DNA of 64,000 nt from contig OZ059896.1 in NCBI GenBank assembly GCA_964057225.1, positions 6,944,001 through 7,008,000 of the forward strand, in the 5' to 3' direction. Below are positions 1 to 59,863 of this stretch, piece by piece (within the stretch, counting starts at the first letter, position 1; every line of letters starts with the position of its first letter). Source of the DNA: Auanema rhodensis (Eukaryota > Animalia > Nematoda). The notes under the pieces were generated by a model. It was given only the letters and a program-made list of their open reading frames with translations. It did not search any database and was not told the DNA's origin. Both the position numbers and the translations under genes were made by a program.

Positions 1-926
1 CGCTTTTATATAACTCTTGATCTGACTAATTTAAATCGTTTCGGTTTTTTAACTGAAATTTAGGTTACCACTGCCTATATTAATTAAGTATTATCAACGA
101 ATTCTAATAAGTGGTAGATTGTTTTCAAGGACAATATTGCTTTCTGTGAGTGACAAGTTTTTTTGCTGTTTTGCACTCATTCATTGACATTAGATACTCG
201 ACCAGTTTTGTTTCTGATAAAACTAATTAAGAATATTGTTGTTAGAAGTGGACCTTATTTGTTTTGATATTAACGCTGCATTTATTTCTAATCATGATAT
301 GTTTGCAGTTCTAAATCATCTGATTTATAAGTGAACAGTTTAAATTTATTTCATATAATAATAGAAATAGTCCTATCTTTAGTTCTATCAATATGAAAAG
401 AACAGGATTTTATCATTATTTTTCACTTCGTTTTCTTATCCCCGTAAACTAGTAAAACTCAAAGTTAATTCATCGCTTTCTCTTCAGTAATACGAAGAAA
501 AACATGAAAATTGTTGATTTTTTTTTCAAATATGCTATACATAAGATAGTGAAATGTTTTCGTTACTACTTTTTGTATTAATTCTAATTCGGTATGACCT
601 TAATAATCTTCAAATTAATGTAACGTTAATTAGTCTTAAGAAGTAATATAGTATTAATTAATCTTGAAAGTATTATAGTTTCAATTTTATAATCATGATA
701 AGCTATTATAATTATGATTTTAACGATTAGGTTGAATTGTTTCTTTCAAGTTTTTTATGGACTCTTTTGTTTTAGTTTTAAGTAAGAAGTAGATATATGA
801 TATATAAACTTTATTTTGCAAATCATACATAGTTAACCAACACCATACAACATTTGCACTTATTATTAAGTATCAATCTTTAGAGTTTCAATCGGCTTCT
901 AAAAATATTTTTAGAAGGCTAGAAGT

Positions 927-3440
927 TTAAGCACGGCGACGGTAAGATTGCTCTGGCTCTGGGGCTGGGAGGATGTGCTTTCTAACGGTATCGTAGCTGA
1001 AATATGTTGATTAAGTAATGAAAGTTTGGAAGCATTGTATTACCTTGGGGAGCTTCCTCCGTTGTTATTGGTTTGTCCAACATTGATGTTGTTGGAGTTG
1101 GTGTTGTGGTTGATCATATCACCTCCCTTTTGGACGCTGGTTTGTCCTTGGTTGTTGGTTTGGGCGAGATCCTTGGCGTTGAAGATGTTTCCGGTAACAA
1201 CGTGTGGTGCAACGTAGCCTCCGTAGCTTCCGTAGTTTGGTTGGGATGGGTAAGATATATATGGTTGTGGGTAGCTTGGTTGAACGTATTGGGTATCGTA
1301 TTGTGGTCCCTTTCCGTTGTTGTTGGTTTGTCCGATGTTGATGGAGTTGGTGTTTTGTCCAACGTTGGTTTGGGCTCCTCCGACTTGGGTGTTGGATTGT
1401 CCTTGTTGGTTGGTCTGTCCAAGGTTTTGGGTGTTGATCTTGTTAGCGGCCAAGAGTTGTCCAATGTTGTGTGGGTATACTGGGATAGTATGGTAGGAAT
1501 CCAACAATTTGATGTTAACATTTGGGCTGAGGATAGATTGGCTGTTGGAGTTTCCGTTTCCAGTTTGCTTGGTTCCCAAAAGACCGCCGAGAAGGCCTCC
1601 GAGGAGTCCACCAGACTTTTCTGAAGAAACAGCGGTAGTCTGAACGGTTGGCTCATTGCGAGCTGGTTGTCCGTATCCTGGTTCTGGTTGTCCGTAGCTT
1701 GGCTGTCCGTAGCTTGGTTGTCCGTATTGGGAATCGTATTGTGGTCCCTTTCCGTTGTTGTTGGTTTGTCCGATGTTGATGGCATTGGAGTTCTCTCCAA
1801 CGTTGGTTTGGGCTCCTCCGACTTGGGTGCTGGATTGTCCTTGGTTGTTGTTTTGTCCTAATCCAGTGTAGTCAACCTTGTTTCCGGCGAAGATGTTTTG
1901 TGGAAGGTATTGTCCAACGTTTCCGTAGCTTGGTTGAGATGGGTAGCTTGGTTGAGCTGGGTAGGTGGTTGGGACGTAGGTTGGGGCGTACTTGGAGGCA
2001 TCGTATTGTGGGGCTCCGTATCCGGCTCCTTGTCCTCCGTTTTGGTTGGTTTGTCCGATGTTGATGGCGTTAGCGTTGGATCCAACGTTGGTTTGTTCTC
2101 CTCCGACTTGGGTGCTGGATTGTCCTTGGTTGTTGTTTTGTCCTAATCCAGTGTAGTCAACCTTGTTTCCGGCGAAGATGTTTTGTGGAAGGTATTGTCC
2201 AATGTTTCCGTAGCTTGGTTGAGCTGGGTAGGTGGTTGGGACGTAGGTTGGGGCGTACTTGGAGGCATCGTATTGTGGGGCTCCGTATCCGGCTCCTTGT
2301 CCTCCGTTTTGGTTGGTTTGTCCGATGTTGATGGCGTTAGCGTTGTTTCCTACATTGGTTTGGGCTCCTCCAACTTGGGTGTTTTCTTGTCCTTGGTTGT
2401 TAGTTTGTCCAAGATTTTTGGTGTTGATGAGGTTTCCGGCGAGAATGTTTTGTGGGATGTAGCTTCCGGCGTTTCCGTAGCTTGGTTGAGATGGGTAGAT
2501 TGGTTGGGATGGGTAAGCTGGATAGGTTTGTGGGTAGCTTGGTTGTCCGTATTGGGAATCGTATTGTGGTCCCTTTCCGTTGTTGTTGGTTTGTCCGATG
2601 TTGATGGAGTTTTGGTTAGATCCAACGTTGGTTTGGGCTCCTCCGACTTGGGTGTTGGATTGTCCTTGTTGGTTGTTCTGTCCAAGGTTTTGAGTGTTGA
2701 TGAGGTTTCCGGCGAGAATGTTTTGTGGGATGTAGCTTCCGGCGTTTCCGTAGCTTGGTTGAGATGGGTAGGTTGGTGGGGCATTGGTGTAAGCTGGTGG
2801 AGCAGTGGTGTAGACTGGGCGAGCAGTGGTGTAAGTTGGTGGGGCAGTGGTGTAAGCTGGTGGAGCAGTGGTGTAAGCTGGTGGGGCAGTGGTGTAAGCT
2901 GGTGGAGCAGTGTTGTAAGATGGTGGAGCTGTTCCGTAGGTGGCCTTGGAGTTTTTGCTTGGCTTGTCCTTCTTGTATTTCTCTTCAGATGAAGAGTTCT
3001 TGTATTTTTTCTTGGCATCATATTGTGGTCCCTTTCCGTTGTCATTGGTTTGTCCAATGTTGATGGCATTGGAGTTTTGTCCGACGTTAGTCTGTTCTCC
3101 TCCAACTTGGGTGTTGGTCTGTCCCTGGTTGTTAAGCTGGGAGAGGTTGGTAAGATCGAATTTGTTTCCAAGAACGGTGCCGGCGGATCCGATAGATGGG
3201 ATTGAGATCTTTGGCTGAAATAATATGTAATTAATTACGTAATATTATCATTGGGCTTACGAGGTTGAAAGCTGGGTCATGAACGGCCTTTCCGTTGTTG
3301 GTGTAATCCTTTGGTGAGACCTTTGGAGAATCAGCAGCTACCTTCATAACAGCTTCAGCATCGTTTCCACCGTAACCGGATGCATCGAGGTCGTAGCAGA
3401 AAGCTACAGCAACGACAGCTGAGATGAGGAACAACTTCAT
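927..3440 (-). CDS. Secreted Asn/Gln/Gly/Tyr-rich tandem-repeat protein, paralogue A (~806 aa)
   Basis: Exons 3440-3261, 3214-1044 and 996-927, with GT..TTTCAG introns of 46 and 47 bp. Signal peptide MKLFLISAVVAVAFC; 7 copies of NNQGQxxTQVGGAQTNVGxNxNAINIGQTN; TAPPAY repeats; ends SYRRRA*. Exon 2 is one open frame; the ORF track only shows its end (1040..1579) because no start codon occurs earlier in frame. Confidence 0.9.
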
Positions 3441-3519
3441 TACCTAAACATTTGGAAATAACACTAGAAAATGAGCCAAAATATTATTTGCGAATAAGCA
3501 CACATATATAAATGAATTT

Positions 3520-3552
3520 GTATATATATTTATATATATATATATATATATG
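3520..3552. repeat. (TA)n microsatellite
   Basis: Interrupted TA dinucleotide run upstream of paralogue A. Confidence 0.8.
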
Positions 3553-3647
3553 TATTCATTTATTATAAAATAAATATAATTATTATTTGTAATGAATAGA
3601 AGAATATTGAGATCGAATGCGATATGTCTTTTATCCATCGAACTCGC

Positions 3648-3656
3648 CTTATATAC
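3648..3656 (-). promoter_or_regulatory. TATA box (GTATATAAG) of repeat gene A
   Basis: GTATATAAG ~210 bp upstream of the ATG; same motif upstream of paralogue B in otherwise diverged flanks. Confidence 0.6.
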
Positions 3657-4787
3657 CTTGCCATATGAAGATTTTCAGTTTTTATGCATTTGTATGCAAG
3701 TCTTGCATTTAATAACCTTGACTAAATAAACTAAGTTTTGCTTGATAACCTAGTTGGGACAACCTTCCAAATTACAGTTTCCACTCTTGAACTTCGTTGG
3801 TGAACTGTTTATTTAACCCAATAGGCAATATCTTTTGATGGTGTACTGTAAATTTTCAGAAAAATACTGGTATAATTCGAAGTTATTAACTTCAGCTAAA
3901 ATGATTGACATCAAGTTCAGTTATTCGTGACGACTTTTGGAGGAAAATCAGAATATCAAGGTTATGAACCTGATTAGTAGAGTAGCTTTTACTACAAATC
4001 CATAAGCAATTTATCAAAATCGTTCAATCAAAAAAATCGCTTGTGATGCTTACAAGTTCCTCATTAGGTCAGAATCGTTAGATCAATTTACAATGTTTTG
4101 CAGAAATGTATAAATCAGATAATTATTATTTAAACGATTTCCCGGATTTAAATTTAGTGAAAAATTTTAATATTTTCATATTTGTTTATTTGGATCAAAT
4201 ATTCAATATTTATTGTTTTGTAATGTCTGACACACTCATATCTAAGCTGCATATGCTGTAAACTATAAAACTCGTGTAAATTATATAGTTATTTGCTGTT
4301 TCTGTACGATCTATGAAATTGCGATCGCTAAATCGTGAAACTGAAAGTTTGTTTTCATGAATTGGATACTTAATTAGTTATTGTTTTTGATCTTTATACA
4401 AAGTGCGAAAAACTGTTCTAAAACTGTTTTTCGAGTATTTCTTTTGAAGATTAGTTCGATAAAACTGTAAGATGTACCGCTATTCCCATTTCGCTTTTCT
4501 TAATTTGTCTATACTTATCTTTTGGAAATTTCTTTGAAAACAGTTTCAGTAATCATTGTACTTTCCATAATCATATACAATTGTCCTTTCATGTTTAGAG
4601 TAACTAATTCATTTTGGTTCTTTAATACTGTTCATACACTTTCTTTTGAAAATACTTGAATAAGCTTTTAATATTTAATAATTTCATTTTGCGAGAAGAC
4701 AATTAATACAATTACCACTTAATATTTATTAATTAATATTATTATAAACCCATTCAACCAATTTGTTTAAAACTTTGAGAAGTTAAT

Positions 4788-7426
4788 CTAAGCACGGCGA
4801 CGGTAAGATTGCTCTGGCTCTGGGGCTGGGAGGATGTGCTTTCTAACGGTATCGTAGCTGAAATATGTTGATTAAGTAATGAAAGTTTGGAAGCATTGTA
4901 TTACCTTGGGGAGCTTCCTCCGTTTTGGTTGGTTTGTCCGATGTTGATAGCGTTAGAGTTTTGTCCAACGTTGGTTTGGTCACCTCCCTTTTGGACGCTG
5001 TTTTGTCCTTGGTTGTTGGTTTGAGCGAGATCCTTGGTGTTGAAGAGGTTTCCGGCAACAACATTTTGTGGAAGGTAGCTTCCGGCATTTCCGTAGCTTG
5101 GGATGGTTGGGTAGATTGGTTGAGATGGGTAGATTTGGGTTTGTGGTTGTCCGTAACGAGAATCGTATTGTGGTCCCTTTCCGTTGTTGTTGGTTTGTCC
5201 GATGTTGATGGCATTGGAGTTCTCTCCAACGTTGGTTTGGGCTCCTCCGACTTGGGTGTTGGTCTGTCCTTGTTGGTTGTTTTGGTTCAAAAGTTGAGAG
5301 AAAAGAGCGTTGTCCTTGATAAGTGATCCGGCTCCTCCGGCTGGAGCGTATCCTCCGGCTGGAGCGTATCCTCCGACGGTTGGCTTCTTGATGAGGAGGT
5401 ATCCAAGGGGCTCATCGTAATGTGGGGCTCCGTATCCGGCTCCTTGTCCTCCGTTTTGGTTGGTTTGTCCGATGTTGATGGCGTTAGCGTTGGATCCAAC
5501 GTTGGTTTGTTCTCCTCCGACTTGGGTGTTGGATTGTCCTTGTTGGTTGTTTTGTCCAAGGTTTTGGGTGTGGATGAGGTTGTTCTTGATCAAATCAGCG
5601 GCTCCAGCTCCAGTTCCGTAAGTTGGGAGTTGTGGCATGTAGGTGGATGGGGATGGCATGTACTTGGAGGCATCGTATTGTGGGGCTCCGTATCCGGCTC
5701 CTTGTCCTCCGTTTTGGTTGGTTTGTCCGATGTTGATGGCGTTTTGGTTAGATCCAACGTTGGTTTGGGCTCCTCCGACTTGGGTGTTGGATTGTCCTTG
5801 TTGGTTGTTCTGTCCAAGGTTTTGGGTGTTGATGAGGTTTCCGGCGAGAATGTTTTGTGGGATGTAGCTTCCAGCGTTTCCGTAGCTTGGTTGAGATGGG
5901 TAGCTTGGTTGAGCTGGGTAGGTGGTTGGGACGTAGGTTGGGGCGTACTTGGAGGCATCGTATTGTGGTCCCTTTCCGTTGTTGTTGGTTTGTCCGATGT
6001 TGATGGCATTGGAGTTCTCTCCAACGTTGGTTTGGGCTCCTCCGACTTGGGTGCTGGATTGTCCTTGGTTGTTGTTTTGTCCTAATCCAGTGTAGTCAAC
6101 CTTGTTTCCGGCGAAGATGTTTTGTGGAAGGTATTGTCCAACGTTTCCGTAGCTTGGTTGAGATGGGTAGCTTGGTTGAGCTGGGTAGGTGGTTGGGACG
6201 TAGGTTGGGGCGTACTTGGAGGCATCGTATTGTGGGGCTCCGTATCCGGCTCCTTGTCCTCCGTTTTGGTTGGTTTGTCCGATGTTGATGGCGTTTTGGT
6301 TTTGTCCAACGTTGGTTTGGGCTCCTCCTACTTGAGTGTTTTCTTGTCCTTGGTTGTTAGTTTGTCCAAGATTTTTGGTGTTGATGAGGTTTCCGGCGAG
6401 AATGTTTTGTGGGATGTAGCTTCCGGCGTTTCCGTAGCTTGGTTGAGATGGGTAGCTTGGTTGAGCTGGGTAGGTGGTTGGGACGTAGGTTGGGGCGTAC
6501 TTGGAGGCATCGTATTGTGGGGCTCCGTATCCAGCTCCTTGTCCTCCGTTTTGGTTGGTTTGTCCGATGTTGATGGCGTTAGCGTTGGATCCAACGTTGG
6601 TTTGGGCTCCTCCGACTTGGGTGTTGGATTGTCCTTGGTTGTTGTTTTGTCCGAGGTTTTGGGTGTGGATGAGGTTGTTCTTGATCAAGTCAGCGGCTCC
6701 AGCTCCAGTTCCGTAAGTTGGGAGTTGTGGCATGTAGGTGGATGGGGATGGCATGTACTTGGAGGCATCGTATTGTGGTCCTCCGTATCCAGCTCCTTGT
6801 CCTCCGTTTTGGTTGGTTTGTCCGATGTTGATGGCGTTTTGGTTAGATCCAACGTTGGTTTGGGCTCCTCCAACTTGAACGTTTTCTTGTCCTTGGTTGG
6901 AAGTCTGTCCGAGGTTTTGGATGTTGAAGAGGTTGTTCTTGATCAAGTCAGCGGCTCCAGCTCCGGATCCGTAGGTTGGAATTTGTGGAACATAGGTGGA
7001 TGGGGATGGCATGTACTTGGAGGCATCGTATTGTGGTCCCTTTCCGTTTTGGTTGGTTTGTCCAATGTTGATGGCGTTAGCGTTGTTTCCTACATTGGTT
7101 TGAGCTCCTCCAACTTGGGTGTTGGTCTGTCCCTGGTTGTTAAGCTGGGAGAGGTTGGTGAGGTCCATCTTGTTTCCGGTGACGATGTTTGGAAGAGCAA
7201 TTTTTGGGAGCTGAAAATTGGAGTATGTTTTGAATGTTTTTAGCAGCAAGCTTACAGCGAAGTCACGGATTGGCTTTCCGTTGTTGGTGTAATCCTTTGG
7301 TGAAACCTTTGGTGAATGGGCAGCTACTTTCTTGACAGCTTCAGCATCGTTTCCACCGTAACCGGAGGCATCGAGGTCGTAGCAGAAAGCTACAGCGACG
7401 ACAGCGGAGATGAGGATCAACTTCAT
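4788..7426 (-). CDS. Secreted Asn/Gln/Gly/Tyr-rich tandem-repeat protein, paralogue B (~848 aa)
   Basis: ORF 4901..7426; exons 7426-7256, 7210-4905 and 4857-4788. Signal peptide; 9 copies of the N/Q/G core alternating with Y/P-rich spacers (PQYDASKY.., YPSQPSYG, AGGYAPAGGY); ends SYRRRA*. Confidence 0.92.
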
Positions 7427-7601
7427 TACCTAAACATTTGGAAATAAAATTAACATTTAAAAGAAAGAAAAAGAATAATTGAATGAACGAAATAAGTAAA
7501 AGTGTTGATATTATTTTATAAGCGAGCAACAATTTTTATTGGTTAAATAGATATTGTTGTTTGTTGTTTGGTTGGTATGCTCTATCTTGGTGAGCCTCTC
7601 G

Positions 7602-7610
7602 CTTATATAC
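7602..7610 (-). promoter_or_regulatory. TATA box (GTATATAAG) of repeat gene B
   Basis: GTATATAAGCGAG ~180 bp upstream of the ATG, matching the motif upstream of gene A. Confidence 0.6.
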
Positions 7611-8111
7611 TCGAGTTGCTGGGATTTCGATTCACACTACAAAGTTTTGACCGTCGATTTAGGGCAAGTTGATATATCGTTTACGATTTCTGACAAAGCT
7701 AACGTCAACTTGAGATTAACTAGTAGTTTTCTATCGGCAGAATCTGTCATAGAGTATTTCCCAACAACTTTGTTTTCGATTCTTCGATCGACTGGCGCAA
7801 CTTCGTTCGTTCTTTCTGTCTGTTGAGTGCGGCAAGTCAATCAAAAAGTCAATAAAATATTAGATATAGCAGACGATGTATTGAAAACATGAATAATCTC
7901 AGCTAACTTATCTTCATAACTTTCCTTTCTTTCGATTCTTAAACATGATTTTTACTTCCTGGTAGATTTCCGTCTATTATCTACAATGTCTGGGATTTTA
8001 TCCCCCTTTCCTATCACTGTTCTATGCTATTTGCTAAATAATACAAACTCTAACTATAGTTTTAATTAACATATTTATTCAATTCATTCATACAACTACA
8101 AATAAATATTA

Positions 8112-15652: not shown

Positions 15653-16451
15653 TTAGTGGTGACGATGTCTAAGTCCACGTCCACCACGCATACCGTGATG
15701 TCCGAAATGTCCGAAGCGTTCTTTGTGGAGTTCGAACAATTCATCACGTGCATCCTCAGAGAGAGCAGTGTAGATATCACGCTTTTGTTGGTCGAGTTTC
15801 TCGAGTTTATCATAGGCATCACGAGCTTCCTTGCTCAATTTCTCAACCTTAGCTTTGTAAGCTTCACGATCATCTTCCATTTTCTTGTGGAATTTGTTGA
15901 ATTCTTCAAGAAGATCTCCAGTGAGGATTTTGTCAGCAAGTTCTCTAAGCTTAGCTGGCTTTTCATCGTGCTTGATGCTTCTGTCCTTAAAATTGAATAT
16001 ATGATAGATGATCAATTAGTATACTGTATCAATACCTTGAAGATAGCACGGAACTGTTCTTGGATATCCTTGGAGGCATTCTTAAGGAATGGTGGAAGTG
16101 GTGGGCCTCTCTTGAAGATAGATTTACGTTGTTCCTTAGTGAGTCCTTCCATCTAATAGATCAAATAAGAATTTTCAAACAAATCACATTATTCTAACCA
16201 ATTCACGGGTCTGTCCTTGTTGATTGTAACATTTGTCTCCCTCTTTGTAATCGGCCCAAATTTCCTTCATTTTGGTTTGCATTTCTTCTGGGAGATCTTC
16301 AATAAATGGTGGAAGCCCGCATGGTGGAGGTCCCTAAGAATAAGCAACATTTTTAAAAATCACACACTATTAGGTTTACCTTTCTGAATCCTCCAAATGC
16401 CTGAGTTACCGATACCAGCAACGCAGCAGCCAAAATAAAACGAAGAGACAT
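15653..16451 (-). CDS. Secreted helical SXP/RAL-2 (DUF148)-like protein
   Basis: Four exons; signal peptide MSLRFILAAALLVSVTQA; CGLPPF and PPFLKNASKDIQEQFRAIFKD..EKPAKLRELA motifs; His/Gly/Arg-rich tail; TATA (CTATATAAG) at ~16515-16523. Confidence 0.75.
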
Positions 16452-26688: not shown

Positions 26689-29600
26689 TTAAGAGAGGAA
26701 TGTTGGTGAAAGGACATTAGCAGCTAAGGCTGAATCAGTGAAAACAGATGGTGATAAGACTGATGGTGAAAGAATAGTACCTGAGAGAATAGTTGGTGAT
26801 AGTACATCTGGACATAATACAAATGGAGATAATATTAAAGGGGATAAAACATAAGGATTAATAACATTAGGAGCTAAAACATAAGGAGAAAAGACGTAAA
26901 CATTGAATACTGCAGCTGATAAGACGTTGGGTCCTAATACGTATGGGGAAAAGATAAGTGGATTACCGACCTGTTAAAAAATAAAAATAAATTATATCAT
27001 ATAATTAATAAAATTTTATTTTATTTTTTAATAAATTTGAACTTAAAACTATACCTGCGGAGATATAACTGGTGGAGAGATTAAAAGAGGGGATAAGATA
27101 TTAGGTGAGAAAATTGATGGTGACAAGGTAACAGGACCAAGAACAGATAACTGAAATAGAAGTATCATTAACTCAATTATTATCTGATTGAACTAAAACT
27201 TTTTAGTCTTAAAACTTTATAATATAAGTTATAAATTAAATATTTTAATATTTACCGTATTAACAGTTGGGGAAAAGGCATATGGAGATAATGTCACATG
27301 TTGGAAGTATACAGTAGCACGTTTAGAACGATTTGGTGACAACATATTATGAGGATCTCCCATTTTTCCATCAGCTATTAATCGAATTGTATTTCGAAGG
27401 CTTTCTTCTTTTTCAAATTCAGACATTTCTCCATAACGTTCCATATCAAATGGAAATTCATTTGATCTATTTAATAAAGCTGAAAAATAATTAGATAAAA
27501 GCTTAATATAGTTTTTATAATAATTACCATTTTCTCCATATAATTGTTGCATTTGTTCTTTTTCCAAAAATGAATATTTTCTATCTTCTAAATGTTTTTT
27601 CTGATGAGGATGAAGGGCATTCTCTAATTCTTTAAATGTTGTTTCTAATAAATTAGTTATATCTACAACATCTTTATCTAAATTAAGAGATTTTAATCCT
27701 TTTACAGATTTCATGGCTTCATCAACAGCATTATTAACACCTGTAAATATATAATTATTAATGAAAATATTTGATTATTTCCAATAAAAACCTGATAAAT
27801 CCATTACAAGTTCCATAATTGTATCACGATCTTTTTCATTCATTCCAGTACTTTCAAGAATAGTAGGTATTGGTAATATACTATTTTCACTATCATCCTT
27901 ATATAATGGGAAAAGATTTGGTGATAATAATTTTCTTAAATTATAAATAAATAAATAATTTTAAAAATAAAATATAAATACTCACTTGCTTGTTGAATAT
28001 TTGTCTGGCATAATTGGTAAAAAGCGAGGTGATAACATATTATAGTTTATATCTTTTGTATGTTTTGATACAGTATCTACAAGACCATAAAGCTTTTCAT
28101 CAGCCATACTTGGAACATCCGGCATAATATCACGGAATCTAAGATAAATATATCATATTAAAATATTTTTTTAAATATTAATTATATAAATACCTATCAG
28201 TAAATGTTTTTCGTGATCTTAATGGATTATTTTTTCCTACAACCATATCAAGCATACGATGTTTGAATTGACCATCATTATTCTTTTTTTCTACCATATC
28301 TTGAAGCTAAAAAAAATTAAATTATAAATTGGTTTTTTAATTATTATATTTATTTACCTCACGAATTTTTTTATAAGATTCTTTTAGTTTTAAAGTTTCT
28401 TGTACAGTTTCATTTCGAAGTGTTCCAACAACTGTAGAAATTAGATTTGTTACAGTCTAGAAAGAAAGAAATTAAGAATATTTTGTTTTCATTCAAAACA
28501 AAACATCAAAGTTCTTTTATTTTTTATTTATTTTTCTAGTTGCTTAGCTTCCGCATATTATTTGAATGTGTGAACATATTAATATTTTTAAAAAAATTAA
28601 TAATTTTAATTAAATAATATTTTTAAAATTAATTAATATAATTCAAAAATTTATTATACTCTGTTAATTACCTTGACTGGTGATTTATTATTTGATAATA
28701 AACTAGGCATGTGATCCATCTTAGTAACTCTGAATCCATGAGTTGTGTCACCTCGATCTAGTCTCTTGGCTTCCGCTACCATTTCCTCCTAAAATGATAA
28801 TATAATATAATAATAATTATATTATTTTAATAATATTACATTTGCATATAAGGATAGTATATTACGCTTAAATCTACGATGTCTAAACTTGTTAAAATCA
28901 ATTCGTATTGGAGTGCGTAAATTTGATTCATGTTGTTCACTGAAAAAAGGTAATGTTTAATGATTAATCTAAAATTGAAATAATAAATTTGAGAAGATAC
29001 GGTAGTGACATCTTCATTGACATGAAAATCATGTGACGTTCAATATCCATAGAAAGTGCACGATTTTTTAAAATCGAAATTTAGTTCATGATTAACAAAA
29101 AAAAGCGACATTTTGACGATATTTAGTGATAATACATATGTTAATTGGATTATTTTTAATTAATTAATAAACATAAATCAAGCATATTATCATTATTTAT
29201 ATAATAACAAATGTTTTAAATTAATAGTCATATCATATGAAGAACTGGAAGTTTGATTTATCAATAAAGTTTCGAACGGATAATTCTAGTCTTATCCTTC
29301 AAGCTAAATAAATTATTTATAGATATCTTGTCTCTTTCTTTGTTTCTGATGATCGGATTCGAAGCAGGAGTGATTGCTACGGATATATGAAAAGCACAAG
29401 TTCATTTCAAATGAATGAACTATCATGTTATTTCAAAAAGTGAACGTCATCGGCTGATGTTTCACTTGGCCGATTGACCCACTTCATCATTAGAAAGTAG
29501 ATATGTAGTCAATCTTCCTTTTTTTTTGTCATATCACGTAGAGCATTTCCATTGTTTCTCAATACTTTACATCCTGTAATTTCTTACAGGTTCGATATTA

Positions 29601-43700: not shown

Positions 43701-46700
43701 AAAAAAAAATTATAAACTAAACTTGTCTGTTCTTTTTGAATAACTCACCGTGTTGCATAGGCACTTTTTCGGAATCAACTTTCTCATTTACGTTAATTGA
43801 ATCAAGTTGGAACAATTCTGTGTTTAATTTTCTTGGAAAACCATTATATTTAAAAGTTCGTTCTTCTCCAGTGGAGGGGTCGATAAAAGGTTCGGGAGGA
43901 GCAATAAATACCTGAGGAAGAAAAAACAGATGAAGAAAGAAAAAAAAACTAACATTTGGATGCTTTTCCGAAGAAGACGTATCAGTTTCCAACAATGGTA
44001 AGGGAGGAGTATCATCTAAAAATGAGATTATAATAAAAATATAAATATATAAAAAAAACAAACCATTAATTTTATTAATGCAGTCGTCAAAAAAAGCATT
44101 GAACGTATTTTTATCAGATACAAAGCTACGCTCCTCGATAAAACGAATAAAAGACTGAGTTTCACAAAATCTAAAAAAACGTATATCACTATTTGTAAGA
44201 GGAAAAAGTTGATACTTTCTGAAAAACGGTTCACTAGTCTTATCCCGAGATTTCATAAATCCTTCTATATCAAACAAATTTCCTGTATCCGTGGCATTTA
44301 CAGTTGCTGAAGCACTTTTAATAGGACGTAAGTATGACTGATAGCCCTTCATGATATTTGCCATAAATCTGTTAAATATAAAATAATTATAACGATAAAA
44401 AGAGTTTGAATATACCTAAGGAAAGCATCTTGTATTTCAGTTTCTATTTCTTTCCGTTTCCTATGCATTTGTTGTTCTTCATCTAGAGGTAAAAAATCAT
44501 TTCGCTTATGACGGGTAAGAAACTCATAAGATTGAGCACAAATTCTAAAAAAAAATTTTTTTTAATACAAAATTCATATCCCAGTTGTTTTACCTTTTGT
44601 ATAACTCTTCTAATGAGTATTTCAACTGTTTTGTTGCTTTCTTAGGAAGCATAGAGAGTTTGATGGACTGTCTAACCTTTGACCCACTAATAGTACATGT
44701 ATCTAAGTCAAAACATGTGACATCGTCTGGAGGATCTTCATACAGTTCGAAATATCTGAATATTATTGTAAAAGAATATAAATAGTCTAAAATATATAAA
44801 AAAAACCTTGAATCTACACCCGCGATAAAAGGTAAAGGGGCATGAAGTACTCCTGCTAAGCCTAATGGACATTGAGGAACATACGGACATTGCCAATGAA
44901 ACGGAAACATTAGAGCCCGGATTGATTCGGCAACAGCAGTAAGCATCCATGATCTACAATTAAAAAAAAACAAATAATGAAATAAAATTCATGTGAAAAA
45001 ACCTCAAGGAATGAACAAGAATTTTTTGCTCCAATAATGCCAAAAGCATTAGATACATCAAATTTTCAGATCCTAAACTTCTTAGAGTTTCAAATAATTG
45101 TGCACCTGTGAAATAAAAGTAAAAACAGCAAATTGAAAAAATAAAACCATTTAAGGGCAACTGGCAATCATCTTGAGATTCAAAGCTAATAGTTTCGTTG
45201 CCTAATTCAACAACAACTTGAGGCCTTCGAGGAGTTGGAAAAGATACTTCATATCTCTGCAAATAACATTAATCACATTAAACAAAAAAAAACATACCAA
45301 GTGTGATAGATATCGTTCAATAGGAACTGATGTTTCAGTTACTTTTTGACTTATCCTGTGAATATAATAAAGAAAGCGCTTAAATGAATGGAAAAAGGGA
45401 TAACGAGAAATTAAGCAAATCGCTATGTTGGTATGGAATTCGATCTGGAAGCAAAAAACTAGATTAACTTTCTTGTTTAGTATGTACTTGGTCAGCAGGA
45501 TCATTATTACTTGAAGAATCATCTGCAACAACTCCACTAATACCATCTCCTGGAGTTAATTCCAGTTGTTCTAACTGTTCGTCCGTCAATTTATCAGTAT
45601 ATTTCTCATAAAACGATACAGCTGCACCATAGAATTTAGTTCCATTCTATGAAAAAAAGATTTAATAAGAAAGCTAAAACAAAATCAACTTCATCAGTTA
45701 ACACGAATGTAGTAAAAGATCTATCTGGAGCTTGGCAATTAGATGGCCAACATTCAATGACAGCTCCCATTGGCAAACAAAATAAGGGCACATTTTGAGC
45801 AAGACGAAACTGATCGTCATTCGAGACACGTAAAGGAAAAGAATCTAGCACCTGGACAACATGTATTATTAAATGTATTAATTAAGCTTAACAAACAGTG
45901 GGTTTATAAGCAAGTCGTTTAGATGTTCCCTGTGTTTTCTTATAACATATATAAACATCAGAACCAACCATACCCTGAATAAAAAAAACAATTGTTCGAG
46001 GCTTCAATAAAACTTCAAACCTTATTCAGATTTTTTGAAATTTTATAATAAGTATGCGGTGGAACTTCTCCTTTATTTGCTAATATTACAACAATGTTAG
46101 TTACCACAAATTGACTAGGTGTGCTATTTTGAGGTGCGCGACGATAAGTGAGAAATATTCCCTGTAATTTTTATTCCAAAGATATCAAAGTAATTAAGCA
46201 AACCGGAGTCGCGTTATTTACATTAGCTGTTTTTCCAAAAGGTGTCGTTTGAACAACATTGATGTCTACCATTGGTTTATCACCACGTCCTACATCTTGT
46301 AATAAGCCAACTAATAAGCTAATTTCAAACCTTGATCAAGAATCCCAATATCTACTATAGGTGGTTTATGATAGCCTCGTCGGAACCCAAGAAAAACACT
46401 TGGCATTCTTATCGAACCATGATTCAAATCAGCAGGATGTCCTAATGGAGTGGTAGAGATCATTTCGAAGCCATTGGGCATCTATATTAATAAGTATGAA
46501 AATTGTGCTCAACAATGATGAGTAACCGTTTCACCCTGCGAAGGAAAAATAACACATATATCTGTTATAGGAGCCAGAGGTTGAGTATTTCTGCATCCAC
46601 ATTCTTGTGATGATGGAGATAATTGCTCAAGTGACGATTTATCTAATCCAGCAATCACGAAATGTTCAAAAATTTGATGCTCATCATCACGCATTGTCAT
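40740..46700 (-). CDS. denn-4: DENND4-like Rab GEF (MABP-uDENN-DENN-dDENN-PPR)
   Basis: [84 protein letters not shown]-like [38 protein letters not shown]. Confidence 0.93.
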
Positions 46701-47053: not shown

Positions 47054-48895
47054 CTATTGTCCTCTATGTTGTCTCCACCACTGTTTCACAAGTGAATGTC
47101 CTTCATCAGTTACAATAACAAGTTTTTGTGTGCTCTCAGCCCATAGAAGAACATCCTCGTTAGCAGCAAAGTCGCGAACACCTTGCAATAATTAATTATA
47201 AGAAGCTTTCGAAAAATTACTTACCGACAAACTCATCTTCCGTTTCAAACACTGAGTAAAGAGTAGCATCTGTGAATACAAGACGCTTTCTCTCATCTTC
47301 CCAAAGACGAATTTGATCCGCAACCTGAAATGAATAAATCAAGTGCTAACATGTGTTTATCAGGGTACTGTAATGGGTAGACAATTCAAAGGTCCAGATG
47401 AGGCCAGACATTTCGGATGAGCATTCGATCGCAAGAAAGATATGATTTGAATAGCTGTAATCCCCACCTGAAAAAAGAAAAATATTAAAACTCTCTAAAT
47501 CAAGAACTAAACCTGTAGTGCTCTACGTACAGAATCTCTAGTGAGAATTCCTACAGACATATCATTGAACCTAAGCTAAAATTGAAAAAAAAAGAAATTA
47601 AAAAAAAGAAACCTGTATGTCATTTCTGTAAAAGTGGATAAAATTGCTAATTCTAAGCTACTATTGGTATAAGCATACAAACGGAAGTTTGTTTCTACAA
47701 TAATATAGCCGTCTTTACGCTCCTGTGATCCCTGATCTTCATCAGATCTACTAGATAAGTGCCATAATAATGGAGTTAAGAAAAACACACTGAAAGAAAA
47801 TAATAAATAGAAATAAATAAATAAATAAAATTTACCCATCTTTACGCTTTCGTATGAAAATTAAACCTAATTCTCTCATGTGCATTACCAGCTCATTCTG
47901 ACCTTCACTCCATGTAGGATCGAGTTCGAAAGCCCGTTTGGTTATATCATCTCCTGTATAAACAAAATACTCAAAACTCATAGAAAATTGGTTATTACCC
48001 TTGTCGACACATAAAATTATTCTTATCATTACCCACATTAATTCCTTGAGTTCGCGGCCTTCAACTTGAGCCAATCTCAGGTATTCTTTAACTCCTCAAT
48101 TAAGTAAAACGACGATAGGTTAAACCTGTCATATATGTCCATAGTTGTTGGATTGGACTAAGAAGAAGGAACTGGAAACCTGTGGAAGTTATTTCTAAAT
48201 CATTTTCTCCTTCTCCACTAGTAAACTTTGCACTATGAAATAACTTTCTGGTTGTGGCAGAAACCGAAGCTTTGTTCTGCTCAGAAGGCAAAGCCAAATA
48301 TCTGCAACTTTGAATTTTCTGTATTTTCGTTTTATATTCAAACCTTAAAATACATTCCCATCTTTCATTTGATTTTCTAACAATTTCTTTATTACGTTTC
48401 TTATCTTCGATTTCGGAAGAATTTATATTAGCACATCGCTTCGAGCCATTCATTACAGCGGCTAGATATGCTCTACGGAACCGGTCCTAGACAAGTCATT
48501 TTTAGAGAAAATAAAAAACACCATGACAAACATTGATCATGAGTTTACTATCAACCGTATGAACAAGCCTCAACTTTTTCAATAAATCAATATTATTTCC
48601 AATTTCTTTACATTCCTGTTTCAACGAATCACTGCAAAACTTAAAAATAATAAGAACCCGTTTAATACAACTTACATTACGTGTGAATTCCATATTATTT
48701 TCACGAGTAACTGCTGAGCAACAGTGGGTAAAAGACGAAACAAGAAAAAAGCTATGAATCGACTACTGTTAGCATGCCAATTCATTAAAACAAACCAGAT
48801 GACGGCTCTTTTTGTAGGAAAGATATGTTCTCATCCGATAATCCAATTACAAAATCAAGAAAAATATTAGTTTCAGAAGATTCAACTACAGTCAT
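47054..48895 (-). CDS. gtf-2H4: TFIIH p52 subunit (GTF2H4/Tfb2)
   Basis: ITSTGFQFLLL, GYIIVETNFRLYAYTNS, ILTRDSVRRAL..GITAIQIISFL, DQIRLWEDERKR; ATG immediately after a TTAG acceptor. Confidence 0.93.
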
Positions 48896-55702: not shown

Positions 55703-56627
55703 ATGCAAGCCTCCTCTGAATCTTTCTGTGTTGATCATATACCTGATGAGATGTTTGATATTTCTGGATATGATGACGAAAATGCCTATGAATATTTGGA
55801 TCTTGACCGTTCTCAGAGAAGAACTTTCTCAGCATCTGTATGTTTAAATTTCAAATGTTATTTTTTATATTCTACTTATTACAGAGAGCTTCAACTTCTG
55901 TGAGATCTGATGATACATCCAGCAGTTATTCGAGTATCCATTCTCCCAGAAAAAGTATGACATTAATATCATGGTCAATCGTAAACGTTCAGTATTTTCA
56001 GATGGTTTAAATCGTTTATTACGACGTGATTATCCCATTCCTCGGAATACCAGAAGATCATACGATGATATGATACTAAATTTTAATTCAAAACAGGAAA
56101 CAGAGGATGATGAAGCAGTATATCAAAATATTAACTCTTTTAATGGATCCGAAGATACTTCTCATCTTTATGGTATGTTTTTTCAAGTTAAGTTGCTGTA
56201 ATAATGTTCTCAATTTAGCTCGTCTTTTATGCTCTGTCCTACTTCAAGTACTAGACTCTTTTGATGGTTCCAGAAGATTAGCAAAAATTGAAAAAGGAAT
56301 AGAAAAAATCGTAGGAATTGAAACTGAGAAGCGCCTTGATCTTCTTAATTATGATGAGAAGAAGGAACACATATACTTTTTCTGTAAGTTTTTTATTTCC
56401 TTGTCCAGACTCCTTGTTGCTTTTTTTTTTCATTTTCGAAATTTATAGTTTAAATTTCAGGTAAACAAGTAGAAATTTGTCTACGTCGTATTAATCGCTC
56501 TTCTCTAGCTAATTATAGAAGAGTTTCTGATGAACTTTGTGCAATTTTGAGCTCAGCTCGCAAGCCCCAGCAGTCAAAACTGCAGAAGTTAACTAACAGT
56601 TTTAAGAAAGTGTTTTATTCATCATAG
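55703..56627 (+). CDS. Uncharacterised protein with Tyr-motif-rich disordered N-terminus and helical C-terminus
   Basis: Five exons with canonical phase-compatible introns: MQASSESF..ENAYEYLDL..SSYSSI..SYDDM..EAVYQNI..LYARLLCSVLLQVLD..FKKVFYSS*. Confidence 0.7.
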
Positions 56628-57008
56628 TTTCTGTATTGCCAATATTAATTGTTTCTTGTTCTGCCTTGTCATATAATAATTGCTTAGTAATAGTAATAAA
56701 TTCTACGATTTAAAATTTTTAGAAATAGTAAGACAAATTATTTATAATCAGATCAATTAGTACTTGTCAGATCATACGCGTATTCGATCTTAAATTGGTA
56801 CAATACAATGTTACTTCACAAAAAAAAACGAAAATAAGCTCTGCTCATGAAACAGGAAATTGTTCGAGAATTTTAAAATACTGAGTAATAGTAATGATAA
56901 TGGCACAATGGCCGTCAGATGTACCTTGTATAAGTTTAATTTGAGAATAACATTTCCTGTCATTAAAACATACTACATATATATCGTGTTTAAGTAAATA
57001 ATTTGTTA

Positions 57009-58037
57009 CTAACATGAAGGTTGTTGACAAGACTGTGGCTGATTCAATCCCATTGGAGGCATATTAGAACAAGCTGAATAAGGTGGTGCGAAACCAGGTA
57101 GAGCATTTGGATCAGTCATAAGGGAAGGATAATTGCCCCGATCCATATCCGCTTTCCCTTGGCTAACAACTAACATCCCTAAAACGACATTTTATGATAA
57201 AGATATATTTGTGATATTGTACCTCCTGGTGGCCCATCTTGTCCCATTGGTGGTTTAGGAAGTGGACTTTGTGCATAAGGGGAATTTAGAGACTGTAAAA
57301 ATAAAATAATATAAGAATTCATAAAAGTCTAACCTTATCAGCAGGTGGTGCTGAGTTTGGAGCACCTATCACTCCAGAAGGAGGACCATTCAAATAAGGA
57401 ACAGGGCCACTCAAGGCACTTTGTAGAGGTGGGTGCATTCCTGGTATATAGCCTGGGGGTAACTGAGAGGGAGGAAAAGCTCCAGTTGGAAAAGGTACAG
57501 AAGGAGATCGACCGGGTGGCGGAATAATTCCTGAACAATTGAAATAGGTTATAATGTTATATGCTAACTTACCACGAGCATGAGGGGGTAAATACATAGG
57601 GTGACCAGGATGCATCATAGGCATAGGCCTATAACCAGGCATTCCTGGATGAGGAAAAGCTCCAGGAGATGGTGCAACTCCGGGAAGCCGAGGCATAGGT
57701 CCTGGATGAGGTCCAATAATAGGGCTATATGCAGGAGAGAAAGCAGCGGGATGGGGCCCGAATCCTAAAACTAAAATATGCATATATGTATTATGAATAA
57801 AGAGTACGAACCATTAGGAGGATAACCTCCAGGATATGCAGGAGAAGTCATTGGAATGAAAGGCGATGGAGAAGACATAGAATGCATACGCTGCCTCTCA
57901 ATCATCTTCAAAAAATACAGTATTTTAGTTGTTCGAAACGTTTTACCTGTTGATGATACATGGCAACTTGATGCTGATGTTGCATATGCTGAGCTTGCAT
58001 GTGCTGTTGATGTTGCTGCTGCTGTTGATGCTGTTGC

Positions 58038-58071
<34 letters not shown>

Positions 58072-59101
58072 GCTGTTGCTGTTGTTGTTGCTGCTGCTGC
58101 TGTTGCTGCATTGCTCGATTCTTCTGTTCAATAACGTCTTTCTCAGCTTTAACAAGGCGTTCATCCCTGAAGTTTAAGATTATTTAGATAGTTGTATAAA
58201 ACCACAAACTTTTTAGCATCGCTTATAGCATCAGATATACCATTAGCACTATTGAAAGCTGATGAATTAGTCATAAGCTCCATTCTTCGTAAAGGATTTT
58301 CATCTTCAGTTTTGTTATGATCGCTTTGACCTGATGAAGTACTTTCGGTATCATCTTGACCATCATTACTGGTTTCGTTTGGTAAAAAGCGTTTTACAGA
58401 TGGTTCCTCCGCATCATCCTTAAAAAGGGCCAGATAAAAATATTTTGAACTATAAGAATCTCACGTTTAGTTTTCTTTTAGCCCTCAACCTTTCTCCTTC
58501 GGTTTCCCTTCCAAAATCATCTACATTGTTATTAACTATAGCATTATTATCATCGTTCTTATTACTGTTATTAGATGTTTCGAGTTGTTGTATTCTTTCT
58601 TGGTTCCTAAAAAAACATATTTCATAAACGAGGGAATTAAAAACAAAATAAGAAAAAGAAGAAGGGAGATTCCTACCTATAATACCACTGTACAATACTA
58701 TCGAATTTTTCTAACTCATAATCCTCAGCAGCTTTATTGGCAAGCTCAGATCTGAATTAACATATCATTGGTCAGAAAAATGAAAAAGTTGAAACTTACG
58801 TAAAATATATCACACTTTGCCCTGTGGGTTCGGGATAGTGAGGTTCTTGATAAGGAGGGACAGAGTTAGCAACAGCAGGTGAAGACGTATTAGAAGAGCC
58901 CTCATTACACTAACAATCAATTGGAGTAATATGAATAAAGAAATTAAAAATTCCTACCTTTGCTGTTGTTAACGCGAAAGCTTCTGTAGTCGGCGCATTA
59001 TTGGGCGAAGGCACCGAAGTAGATGCTTGATAATTACATCGCTGAGGAGCAGAAGAATCGCAAGACGATGGATTGGTACTAGAAGGAGAAGAACTCAACA
59101 T
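57009..59101 (-). CDS. Ser/Gln/Pro-rich protein with a BCL9/Legless HD1-like motif
   Basis: About 11 phase-compatible exons; spliced VIYFTSELANKAAEDYELEKFDSIVQWYYRN; basic RLRAKRK; Q26 tract; Pro/Met/Gly-rich C-terminus. Start codon uncertain. Confidence 0.75.
58031..58108 (-). repeat. Coding CAA/CAG repeat (26 Gln)
   Basis: 78 nt of CAA/CAG codons in frame after the ATG at 58111. Confidence 0.95.
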
Positions 59102-59863
59102 GTCCACATCTTAAAATTAAATTATGAGAAAAAGAAATTGAAAAATGTTCACAAAATAACAAGAGGAGAAGCACATTATCCACAATATTGTTACAATAAT
59201 ATTTTAAGACGTGTGGTAAAAGATATAAAATTTCAAAAAATCAACGCATTCCTTACTGAGCTTGAAGTAGCAGCACAGGTCATGCACAACTGGCTAGTGC
59301 CGCCGACCCATTGGCAATCTGCCATGCGCCCTAGAAAGAAGGGCAGGGATAGAGAGTAGAGGGATTAATAGATGACGAGAACATATTTGGTAAAGTGAAA
59401 ACCAATGCAAATAAGCTCAGATTACAGGTCAGAATATAGCGCATATCTTTGCAAAAATAAAAATATTGTTAAAAGAATCACTAATTTCCGTTTAATATAA
59501 CCTAAGGCTCAAGTTTGCTAAAAGGCGCGGACTATGTATATATTACAACATTGCCAAATGACGTAGTTTACAAATAAATTAAGTATTGAGTTTAATGAAT
59601 GTGGGATAAGCTATATCATTTGGATTACGCAGGTCAGATGATAAAAATGAGAGTTGAAATTGAATGGCATTGAAAGCGAGAGTCTAGTGAATAACATTGA
59701 AGTAGGAAGGCATCAGTTCAGACAACTGTCAAGTGTCCTTGTAGAGAATGCAGGTGAAACGATAAGACAAAGGAATTACGGTATAGCTTCGTTTAAAACT
59801 TCATCACTAAAAATCAGATAAATATCGTTTCAACGAGATAAATTATTTAAAATTACCTAAAAT

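What the first reader, a model, noticed from the sequence alone, without database searches (positions are those of the whole stretch)
57009..59101. Candidate nematode BCL9/Legless: intron-split HD1 (Pygopus-binding) motif
Seen: joining the exon ending at 58800, exon 58751-58677 and the next exon gives SVIYFTSELANKAAEDYELEKFDSIVQWYYRN. This aligns without gaps to HD1 as I recall it from human BCL9 (VVYVFSTEMANKAAEAVLKGQVETIVSFHIQN) and fly Legless (IFVFSTQLANKGAESVLSGQFQTIIAYH). The architecture also fits: Ser-rich N-terminus, HD1, a downstream helix (ISDAKKDERLVKAEKDVIEQ) weakly like the beta-catenin-binding HD2, and a Pro/Met/Gly-rich tail. Established: HD1 binds the Pygo PHD finger in the Wnt enhanceosome, and BCL9/Legless is usually described as not identified in C. 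elegans. Inference: nematodes may retain a divergent, shortened Legless-Pygo module that is missed because introns split the motif.
Basis: partly seen in the sequence, partly recalled or inferred. Interest (0 to 1): 0.88.

Follow-up and report, generated by a model that had tools for sequence, protein, structure and literature searches.

The report
Nematode BCL9/Legless-like gene with HD1
This expressed 11-exon nematode gene is the counterpart of the uncharacterised, embryonic-essential C. elegans gene C02B10.5, and its best-conserved part is a real copy of the Pygopus-binding HD1 motif of the Wnt co-activator BCL9/Legless, a family the literature reports as missing from C. elegans.

Summary
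Spliced contigs from four public runs (one study) confirm all ten GT-AG introns, including the two that split the motif.

- **Family:** the protein belongs to a nematode-wide family of "hypothetical" proteins with no Pfam domain. I found members in strongylids, Heterorhabditis and Caenorhabditis, including C. elegans C02B10.5. Two intron positions and phases match the C. elegans gene.
- **HD1 is supported:**
  - A nematode-only profile hits BCL9/B9L HD1 chains in the PDB at E 6e-5 to 1e-3; the next unrelated hit is E 6.6.
  - hhalign gives 96.6% probability (P 6e-10), and 96.0% without the window sequence. Column shuffles score at most 17.6 against 42.5.
  - All seven HD1 positions that Fiedler 2008 names as contacting the Pygo PHD finger or pairing with its strand are kept or conservatively replaced.
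- **HD2 is not supported:** no Pfam PF11502 hit, no PDB hit, hhalign 0.2%. An HD3-type tryptophan is also absent.
- **Not tested:** no Pygo partner could be searched for.

Verdict: a divergent, HD1-only BCL9/Legless-like adaptor. I found no paper or source protein name that links it to BCL9. It can be tested directly in C. elegans.

The parts
56799..59115 (-). Transcribed span (mRNA) of the gene
   Evidence: The spliced contigs of runs X1-X4 reach from 56799 to 59111-59115 (table 8). The polyQ repeat 57996-58113 was skipped by the tool.
58958..59101 (-). Exon 1 (start codon 59101-59099); Ser/Pro/Thr-rich N-terminus
   Evidence: Model. Joint 58909/58958. A 4-codon out-of-frame ATG at 59109 overlaps the start.
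58800..58909 (-). Exon 2; ends with ..GQSVIYFT, the beta-strand part of HD1
   Evidence: The phase-2 intron inside the Thr codon after Phe is at the same place and phase in C. elegans C02B10.5.
58677..58751 (-). Exon 3; SELANKAAEDYELEKFDSIVQWYYR, the HD1 helix
   Evidence: HD1 tests.
58465..58606 (-). Exon 4; end of HD1, Asn/Asp-rich linker and basic RLRAKRKLN (NLS-like; this reading is inference)
   Evidence: The KRK block is conserved in most of the orthologues aligned.
58210..58418 (-). Exon 5; acidic linker and conserved block C1 (NPLRRMELMTNSSAF)
57947..58166 (-). Exon 6; conserved block C2 (KK|DERLVKAEK..), then a 54-residue Gln/His tract
   Evidence: The phase-2 intron in KK|DER is shared with C. 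elegans.
57812..57905 (-). Exon 7; start of the Pro/Gly/Ser/Met-rich tail
57573..57770 (-). Exon 8 (the transcripts use the acceptor at 57770)
   Evidence: Joint 57770/57812.
57334..57530 (-). Exon 9
57223..57292 (-). Exon 10
57009..57178 (-). Exon 11, with stop TAG at 57011-57009
58603..58816 (-). HD1-like element, residues 80-111, interrupted by introns 2 and 3
   Evidence: Coordinates. Homology tests. Contact residues from PMC2726290.
58109..58304 (-). Block C, residues 196-246: two nematode-conserved helices (interrupted by intron 5); not HD2-like
   Evidence: Helices predicted in the orthologue.
56799..57008 (-). 3' UTR
   Evidence: The contigs extend to 56799-56820.

Best explanation
The gene encodes a largely disordered protein, probably nuclear, that is the orthologue of C. 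elegans C02B10.5. It is a divergent, HD1-only relative of BCL9/Legless.

Shown:
- The gene is expressed and spliced as modelled.
- It belongs to a family found in strongylids, Heterorhabditis and Caenorhabditis.
- The family's most conserved element is homologous to BCL9/Legless homology domain 1.
- That element keeps the seven positions Fiedler 2008 names at the Pygo PHD interface: F180 of the strand, plus T182, A185, N186, A189, I200 and V201.

Inferred:
- The short strand (..IYF) pairs with a beta-strand on the rear face of a Pygo-type PHD finger, and the following helix (T/S-E-L-A-N-x-A-A) packs on it.
- This would tether the protein to a chromatin reader.
- The two downstream conserved helices (PLRRMEMMTNS and KKDER..K.EKL) and the Pro/Gly/Met/Gln-rich tail would recruit other transcription factors.
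- Whether one of those factors is a beta-catenin is open, because no HD2 is detectable.
For: - **Splicing:** all ten introns are confirmed by transcript contigs.
- **Family and orthology:**. Blocks A, B and C are conserved. Two intron positions and phases are identical to C02B10.5.
- **HD1, profile against sequence:** a nematode-only profile against 177,635 PDB sequences gives B9L HD1 E 6.3e-5, BCL9 HD1 6.5e-4 to 1.2e-3 and Lgs 0.33; the next hit is E 6.6.
- **HD1, without the window sequence:** B9L still scores E 0.0024, and hhalign gives 96.0%, P 4.5e-9.
- **HD1, profile against profile:** hhalign against BCL9/B9L/Lgs gives 96.6%, P 5.8e-10, over 31 ungapped columns. In 300 column shuffles the mean score was 7.7 and the maximum 17.6, against 42.5 observed.
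- **Contact residues:** the family's invariant residues F, T, A, N, A, A fall on the PHD-contact positions given in PMC2726290.
- **Structure:** AF2 puts a confident helix (pLDDT 92-95) starting at the Thr after Phe, where the BCL9 helix starts. It predicts two further helices in block C, and the rest is disordered.
- **Language-model search:** for C02B10.5 the three nearest named clusters are arthropod "BCL9 homolog" clusters, score 0.78. This is a lead only.
- **Possible partner:** a Pygo orthologue is reported in at least one nematode, Prionchulus (PMC3851687).
- **Phenotype:** C02B10.5 RNAi gave 87% embryonic lethality and clustered with gene-expression phenotypes.
Against: - No HD2. Pfam PF11502 hits neither the window pieces nor six full-length orthologues at E up to 10. 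The block C profile finds no BCL9 HD2 chain in the PDB. hhalign against human HD2 gives 0.2%.
- No HD3-type invariant Trp. The only Trp in the protein lies inside HD1.
- The homology rests on about 31 residues.
- E-values of 1e-3 to 1e-5 hold for a PDB-sized database only.
- The language-model score is below the tool's reliability level.
- No Pygo-type PHD finger could be looked for in this genome or in C. elegans, and the literature reports none in C. elegans.
- C. elegans itself carries Ile at the invariant Ala equivalent to A185.
Confidence: 0.7

Rival explanations
1. The HD1 is real, but the module has been rewired. The family descends from BCL9/Legless but no longer works with Pygo or beta-catenin. 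HD1 would dock on a different PHD finger or another partner, and the protein would act as a general, Wnt-independent transcription or RNA-processing cofactor.
For: - HD2 and HD3 are absent.
- No Pygo family member was identified in C. elegans (PMC2874024).
- The C. elegans RNAi phenotype is early embryonic lethality, grouped with nucleic-acid metabolism, gene-expression and splicing clusters rather than a Wnt-specific class.
- C. elegans has Ala to Ile at a PHD-contact position, and an isoform that starts inside HD1.
Against: - The named PHD-contact positions are kept or conservatively replaced across the family, apart from Ile at the A185 position in C. elegans. That argues the same type of surface is still being bound.
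- A Pygo orthologue exists in at least one nematode.
Confidence: 0.3
2. The resemblance is chance or convergence. A nematode-specific disordered protein happens to carry an amphipathic strand-plus-helix motif that resembles HD1, with no common ancestry with BCL9/Legless.
For: - The similarity covers only about 31 residues.
- Single-sequence E-values are about 0.4-1.
- No other BCL9 element is detectable.
- Ala/Glu-rich helices are common.
Against: - Adding more nematode sequences raises the score, from 14 to 26 bits.
- The match survives removal of the window sequence.
- Composition-preserving column shuffles never come near the observed score.
- No unrelated PDB sequence scores below E 6.
- The conserved positions are the functional contact positions.
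- The independent language-model search also points to BCL9.
Confidence: 0.1

Closest known systems
BCL9 / BCL9L (B9L) / Drosophila Legless, Wnt enhanceosome adaptors
   Same: - An HD1 element in the same register, with the seven positions Fiedler 2008 names at the Pygo PHD interface retained (F180, T182, A185, N186, A189, I200, V201).
- HD1 lies near the N-terminus of a long disordered protein, followed by short conserved helices and a Pro/Gly/Met-rich tail.
- The language-model search of C02B10.5 puts arthropod BCL9 homologues nearest (lead only).
   Different: - Much shorter: 542 aa, against roughly 1,230-1,320 aa for the arthropod BCL9-homologue clusters.
- No detectable beta-catenin-binding HD2 (Pfam PF11502).
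- No HD3-type Trp.
- The downstream conserved helices are nematode-specific.
- No Pygo partner is known in most nematodes.
C. elegans C02B10.5 (NP_500719.1, UniProt O44447) and its strongylid, Heterorhabditis and Caenorhabditis orthologues
   Same: - The same three conserved blocks (HD1, KRK, PLRRMEMMTNS..KKDER) and tail composition.
- Identical position and phase for the intron inside HD1 and the intron in KK|DER.
- None carries a Pfam domain.
- The names their sources give them are "hypothetical" or mutually inconsistent automatic labels.
   Different: - Only about 45% identity in the conserved blocks.
- The window protein keeps ANKAAE, identical to human BCL9, where clade V has ANQAAL and C. 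elegans has INQAAL.
- The window protein has a 54-residue Gln/His tract that is not seen in the others.
- The window protein itself is in neither protein database.

Membership tests
BCL9/Legless | HD1: a beta-strand plus helix that binds the Pygo PHD finger (BCL9 V177-I205; invariant T182, A185, N186, A189, I200) | tested here: met
   - Profile against PDB: E 6.3e-5 to 1.2e-3 on BCL9/B9L HD1 chains only.
- hhalign: 96.6%, P 5.8e-10. Shuffle control. Holds without the window sequence.
- The contact positions match those in PMC2726290.
BCL9/Legless | HD2: the beta-catenin/Armadillo-binding helix (Pfam PF11502) | tested here: not met
   - No PF11502 hit at E up to 10 in the window pieces or in six orthologues.
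- The block C profile finds no HD2 chain in the PDB.
- hhalign against the 2gl7 HD2 sequence gives 0.2%.
BCL9/Legless | HD3: the ChiLS-binding helix with an invariant Trp and a Phe/Tyr doublet, said to occur in all orthologues (PMC5352222) | tested here: not met
   The only Trp of the 542-aa protein is residue 107, inside HD1. No Trp outside HD1 is conserved across the family. I had no HD3 sequence to align, so this is a residue-level test only.
BCL9/Legless | Physical binding to a Pygo PHD finger, and presence of a Pygo gene in the same genome | not testable with these tools
   Only the 64-kb window is held, and it has no single-exon C4HC3 pattern. The scan's notes on this genome mention only PHF10.
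BCL9/Legless | Role in Wnt/beta-catenin-dependent transcription | not testable with these tools
   The only indirect evidence is that C02B10.5 RNAi is embryonic lethal and clusters with gene-expression phenotypes.
Nematode C02B10.5 family | Conserved blocks A (HD1), B (KRK) and C (PLRRMEMMTNS..KKDER), plus shared intron positions | tested here: met
   - The representative search finds only this family, at E 4e-6.
- Alignments.
- Intron position and phase are identical at FT|T/S and at KK|DER.

The most novel reading that the evidence does not exclude
Rhabditid nematodes, including C. elegans, still run a Legless-Pygo type chain of adaptors. On this reading C02B10.5 and its orthologues are the long-missing BCL9. 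Their conserved HD1 would imply a still-unrecognised Pygo-type PHD reader in these genomes, and the nematode-specific helices of block C would replace HD2 as the docking site for one of the divergent nematode beta-catenins (BAR-1 or SYS-1).
Probability: 0.3. Interest if true: 0.92.

Novelty: new variant of a known kind. Interest (0 to 1): 0.8.

Why it matters
Legless/BCL9 and Pygopus are obligatory Wnt co-activators in flies and are cancer-relevant in mammals. A five-phylum survey singled them out as the only Wnt or TGF-beta pathway families it examined without a C. elegans member (PMC2874024). How nematode beta-catenins activate transcription without them has therefore been an open point.

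This gene carries a statistically supported HD1 with an intact PHD-contact surface. Its family is conserved from this nematode to C. elegans, where the orthologue C02B10.5 is uncharacterised and gave 87% embryonic lethality on RNAi. That gives a named, genetically tractable candidate.

The finding also predicts a hidden PHD partner. It further suggests that HD1 is the ancient core of the family and that HD2 and HD3 are dispensable or replaceable.

Tried and rejected
- **Pfam.** Searches on the window pieces and six orthologues gave no BCL9 hit and no meaningful hit at all.
I rejected it after three negative tests. PLRRMELM as an alternative HD2 has no support either.
- **Rfam.** The window gave nothing.
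- **ESM Atlas.** The HD1 piece alone gave no usable hit.
- **Family profile search.** It was swamped by low-complexity tail words and added only C. auriculariae. No clade I, III or IV members, and no close relatives of the window species, were retrieved. The window protein itself is in neither protein database.
- **C. elegans orthologue.** It looked absent in three searches because its 90% cluster is represented by a Logan fragment. I found it only through the cluster listing.
- **PHD finger in the window.** A regex scan for a single-exon PHD finger found none.
- **Scan notes.** The scan's own notes held nothing on Pygo or BCL9 in this genome.
- **Literature.** Searches for a described nematode BCL9, or for C02B10.5 as BCL9, found nothing.
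- **Species.** It stayed coded as "organism A". I infer a nematode from the gene family and from SXP/RAL-2 and Moulting_cycle neighbours.
- **Ortholog databases.** I could not check WormBase, PANTHER or DIOPT. [quoted passage not shown]

Full report
**1. Observation**

Reading the minus strand of 56500-59600 and joining exons at GT..AG sites gives an 11-exon open reading frame. It runs from the ATG at 59101 to the TAG at 57011-57009.

Contigs from four public runs of one study, 100% identical to the window over the gene body, skip exactly these ten introns. So they are spliced transcripts of the same organism. They correct one acceptor (exon 8 starts at 57770), giving 542 aa, and they place the mRNA ends near 59111-59115 and 56799.

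Residues 80-111 are SVIYFTSELANKAAEDYELEKFDSIVQWYYRN.

**2. Is the resemblance to HD1 more than chance?**

- **Single sequence.** A 39-aa piece searched against 177,635 distinct PDB sequences returns only five chains at E<10. All are HD1 peptides of BCL9, B9L or Legless, aligned without gaps in one register (E 0.4-0.55). That is suggestive, not significant.
- **Finding relatives.** An exhaustive phmmer search of 1.84 billion representative proteins with a 63-aa piece found three proteins (E 4e-6 to 4e-5). These led to 15 strongylid "hypothetical proteins" and then to Caenorhabditis proteins.
- **Profile against sequence.** A profile of eight nematode HD1 segments (A1) hits B9L HD1 at E 6.3e-5, BCL9 HD1 at 6.5e-4 to 1.2e-3 and Legless at 0.33. 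The next PDB sequence is at E 6.6.
- **Without the window sequence.** A profile built without the window sequence still hits B9L at E 0.0024.
- **Profile against profile.** Comparison with the three HD1 peptides taken from the PDB outputs (A3) gives 96.6% probability, P 5.8e-10, over 31 ungapped columns. Without the window sequence it gives 96.0%, P 4.5e-9.
- **Shuffle control.** In 300 column shuffles of A3 the mean score was 7.7 and the maximum 17.6, against 42.5 observed. The reversed alignment scores 10.1.
- **Contact residues.** Fiedler et al. 2008 list the HD1 residues that touch the Pygo PHD finger: the strand Y178-V179-F180, and T182, A185, N186, A189, I200 and V201 (PMC2726290). In the ungapped alignment the last of the three strand positions and the six side-chain positions fall on F, T (S in the window), A, N, A, I/L and V/L. 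F, A, N and A are invariant columns in the nematode alignment.

I conclude that the element is a homologue of HD1.

**3. What the gene is**

The family alignment shows four parts:
- **Block A:** SVPSSQEATSP followed by HD1.
- **Block B:** a basic KRK block.
- **Block C:** PLRRMEMMTNSSAF ... KKDER..K.EKL.
- **Tail:** a Pro/Gly/Met(/Gln)-rich C-terminal region.

A cluster listing showed that one Logan-derived representative stands for C. elegans C02B10.5 (NP_500719.1, O44447, 698 aa). In C. elegans genomic DNA the intron inside HD1 lies in the Thr codon after Phe, phase 2, and another lies in KK|DER, phase 2. Both match the window gene exactly, so orthology is secure.

No member has a Pfam domain. 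The names their sources give them are "hypothetical" or mutually inconsistent automatic labels: SH3, bZIP, Remorin_C and FAR1.

AF2 on the Angiostrongylus orthologue predicts only three confident helices in an otherwise disordered chain:
- the HD1 helix, starting at the Thr after Phe (pLDDT 92-95);
- PLRKMEMMTNSS;
- the KKDER helix.

A language-model feature search of C02B10.5 puts three arthropod "BCL9 homolog" clusters first among named clusters. The score is 0.78, which the tool rates as a lead only.

**4. What is not there**

- **HD2.** Pfam PF11502 does not hit it or any orthologue at E up to 10. The block C profile finds no BCL9 HD2 chain in the PDB. hhalign against the HD2 sequence of 2gl7 gives 0.2%.
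- **HD3.** It is described as a helix with an invariant Trp present in all orthologues (PMC5352222). It has no counterpart here: the only Trp of the window protein lies inside HD1.
- **Pygo.** I could not search for a partner. The window has no PHD pattern and the scan's notes list only PHF10. The literature records a nematode Pygo only in Prionchulus (PMC3851687) and none in C. elegans (PMC2874024).

**5. Mechanism**

Shown: this is an expressed, conserved, disordered protein whose HD1 has an intact PHD-contact surface.

Inferred: HD1 docks by strand pairing and helix packing on the rear of a Pygo-type PHD finger. Block C and the tail then recruit further factors. A link to beta-catenin is possible but unsupported.

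The main rival is that HD1 is retained but rewired to another partner in a general transcription role. This fits three observations:
- the early embryonic lethality of C02B10.5 RNAi (194 of 223 eggs unhatched) and its clustering with gene-expression and splicing phenotypes;
- the Ala to Ile change at the A185 position in C. elegans;
- an isoform that begins inside HD1.

Pure chance or convergence is unlikely given the controls.

**6. Comparison and novelty**

The protein works like the HD1 end of BCL9/Legless. Because HD2 and HD3 were tested and not found, I do not file it as a full family member. It is an HD1-only variant.

Searches of 8.4 million papers found no description of a nematode BCL9 and only one paper naming C02B10.5, as an uncharacterised essential gene. 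I could not check ortholog databases.

**7. Verdict**

This is a new variant of a known kind, of high interest because it can be tested directly in C. elegans.

Noticed in passing
window 4901-7426 (-), also 1040-1579 and 2350-3171: A single 841-aa ORF with a signal-peptide-like start and about ten tandem repeats of roughly 80 aa, rich in Asn/Gln/Gly (..QVGGAQTNVG..AINIGQTNQNG..). Related partial ORFs lie nearby. Region 1-8000 has higher GC (40-43%) and strong GC skew (+0.23 to +0.25). No Pfam family matches.
   Followed up: partly
window 43720-44973 (-): Exons of a DENN-domain protein: DENN at E 3e-21 and dDENN at E 5e-8.
   Followed up: partly
window 48103-48453 (-): An exon of a TFIIH subunit Tfb2/p52 homologue (Pfam E 4e-13).
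   Followed up: partly
window 15656-16015 (-) and 27232-27714 (-): Weak, below-threshold matches to two nematode-typical families: SXP/RAL-2 (Ani s 5-like) and Moulting_cycle. They fit a nematode origin for the window.
   Followed up: partly
window 57947-58108 (-): A 54-residue Gln/His tract (CAA/CAG repeat) directly after block C. It is absent from the clade V orthologues. The read tool skipped 57996-58113 as a repeat, so its exact length is not confirmed by transcripts.
   Followed up: partly
window 59101-59109 (-): An out-of-frame ATG at 59109 opens a 4-codon ORF that overlaps the main start codon. The transcript contigs begin only 10-14 nt upstream of the main ATG, just after a ttttaag acceptor-like site, which suggests trans-splicing.
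   Followed up: no
L001 10001-12885 (C. elegans chromosome IV, C02B10.5): C. elegans isoform b (594 aa) starts at the Met inside HD1 and so lacks the strand half of the motif. C. elegans alone among the retrieved orthologues has Ile at the invariant Ala equivalent to BCL9 A185.
   Followed up: partly
P0009 (Cooperia oncophora), P0004, P0008, P0010: Several strongylid gene models look mispredicted at this locus. One has a retained intron between YFT and TELAN, and others have duplicated or interrupted block C. These errors help hide the family.
   Followed up: no
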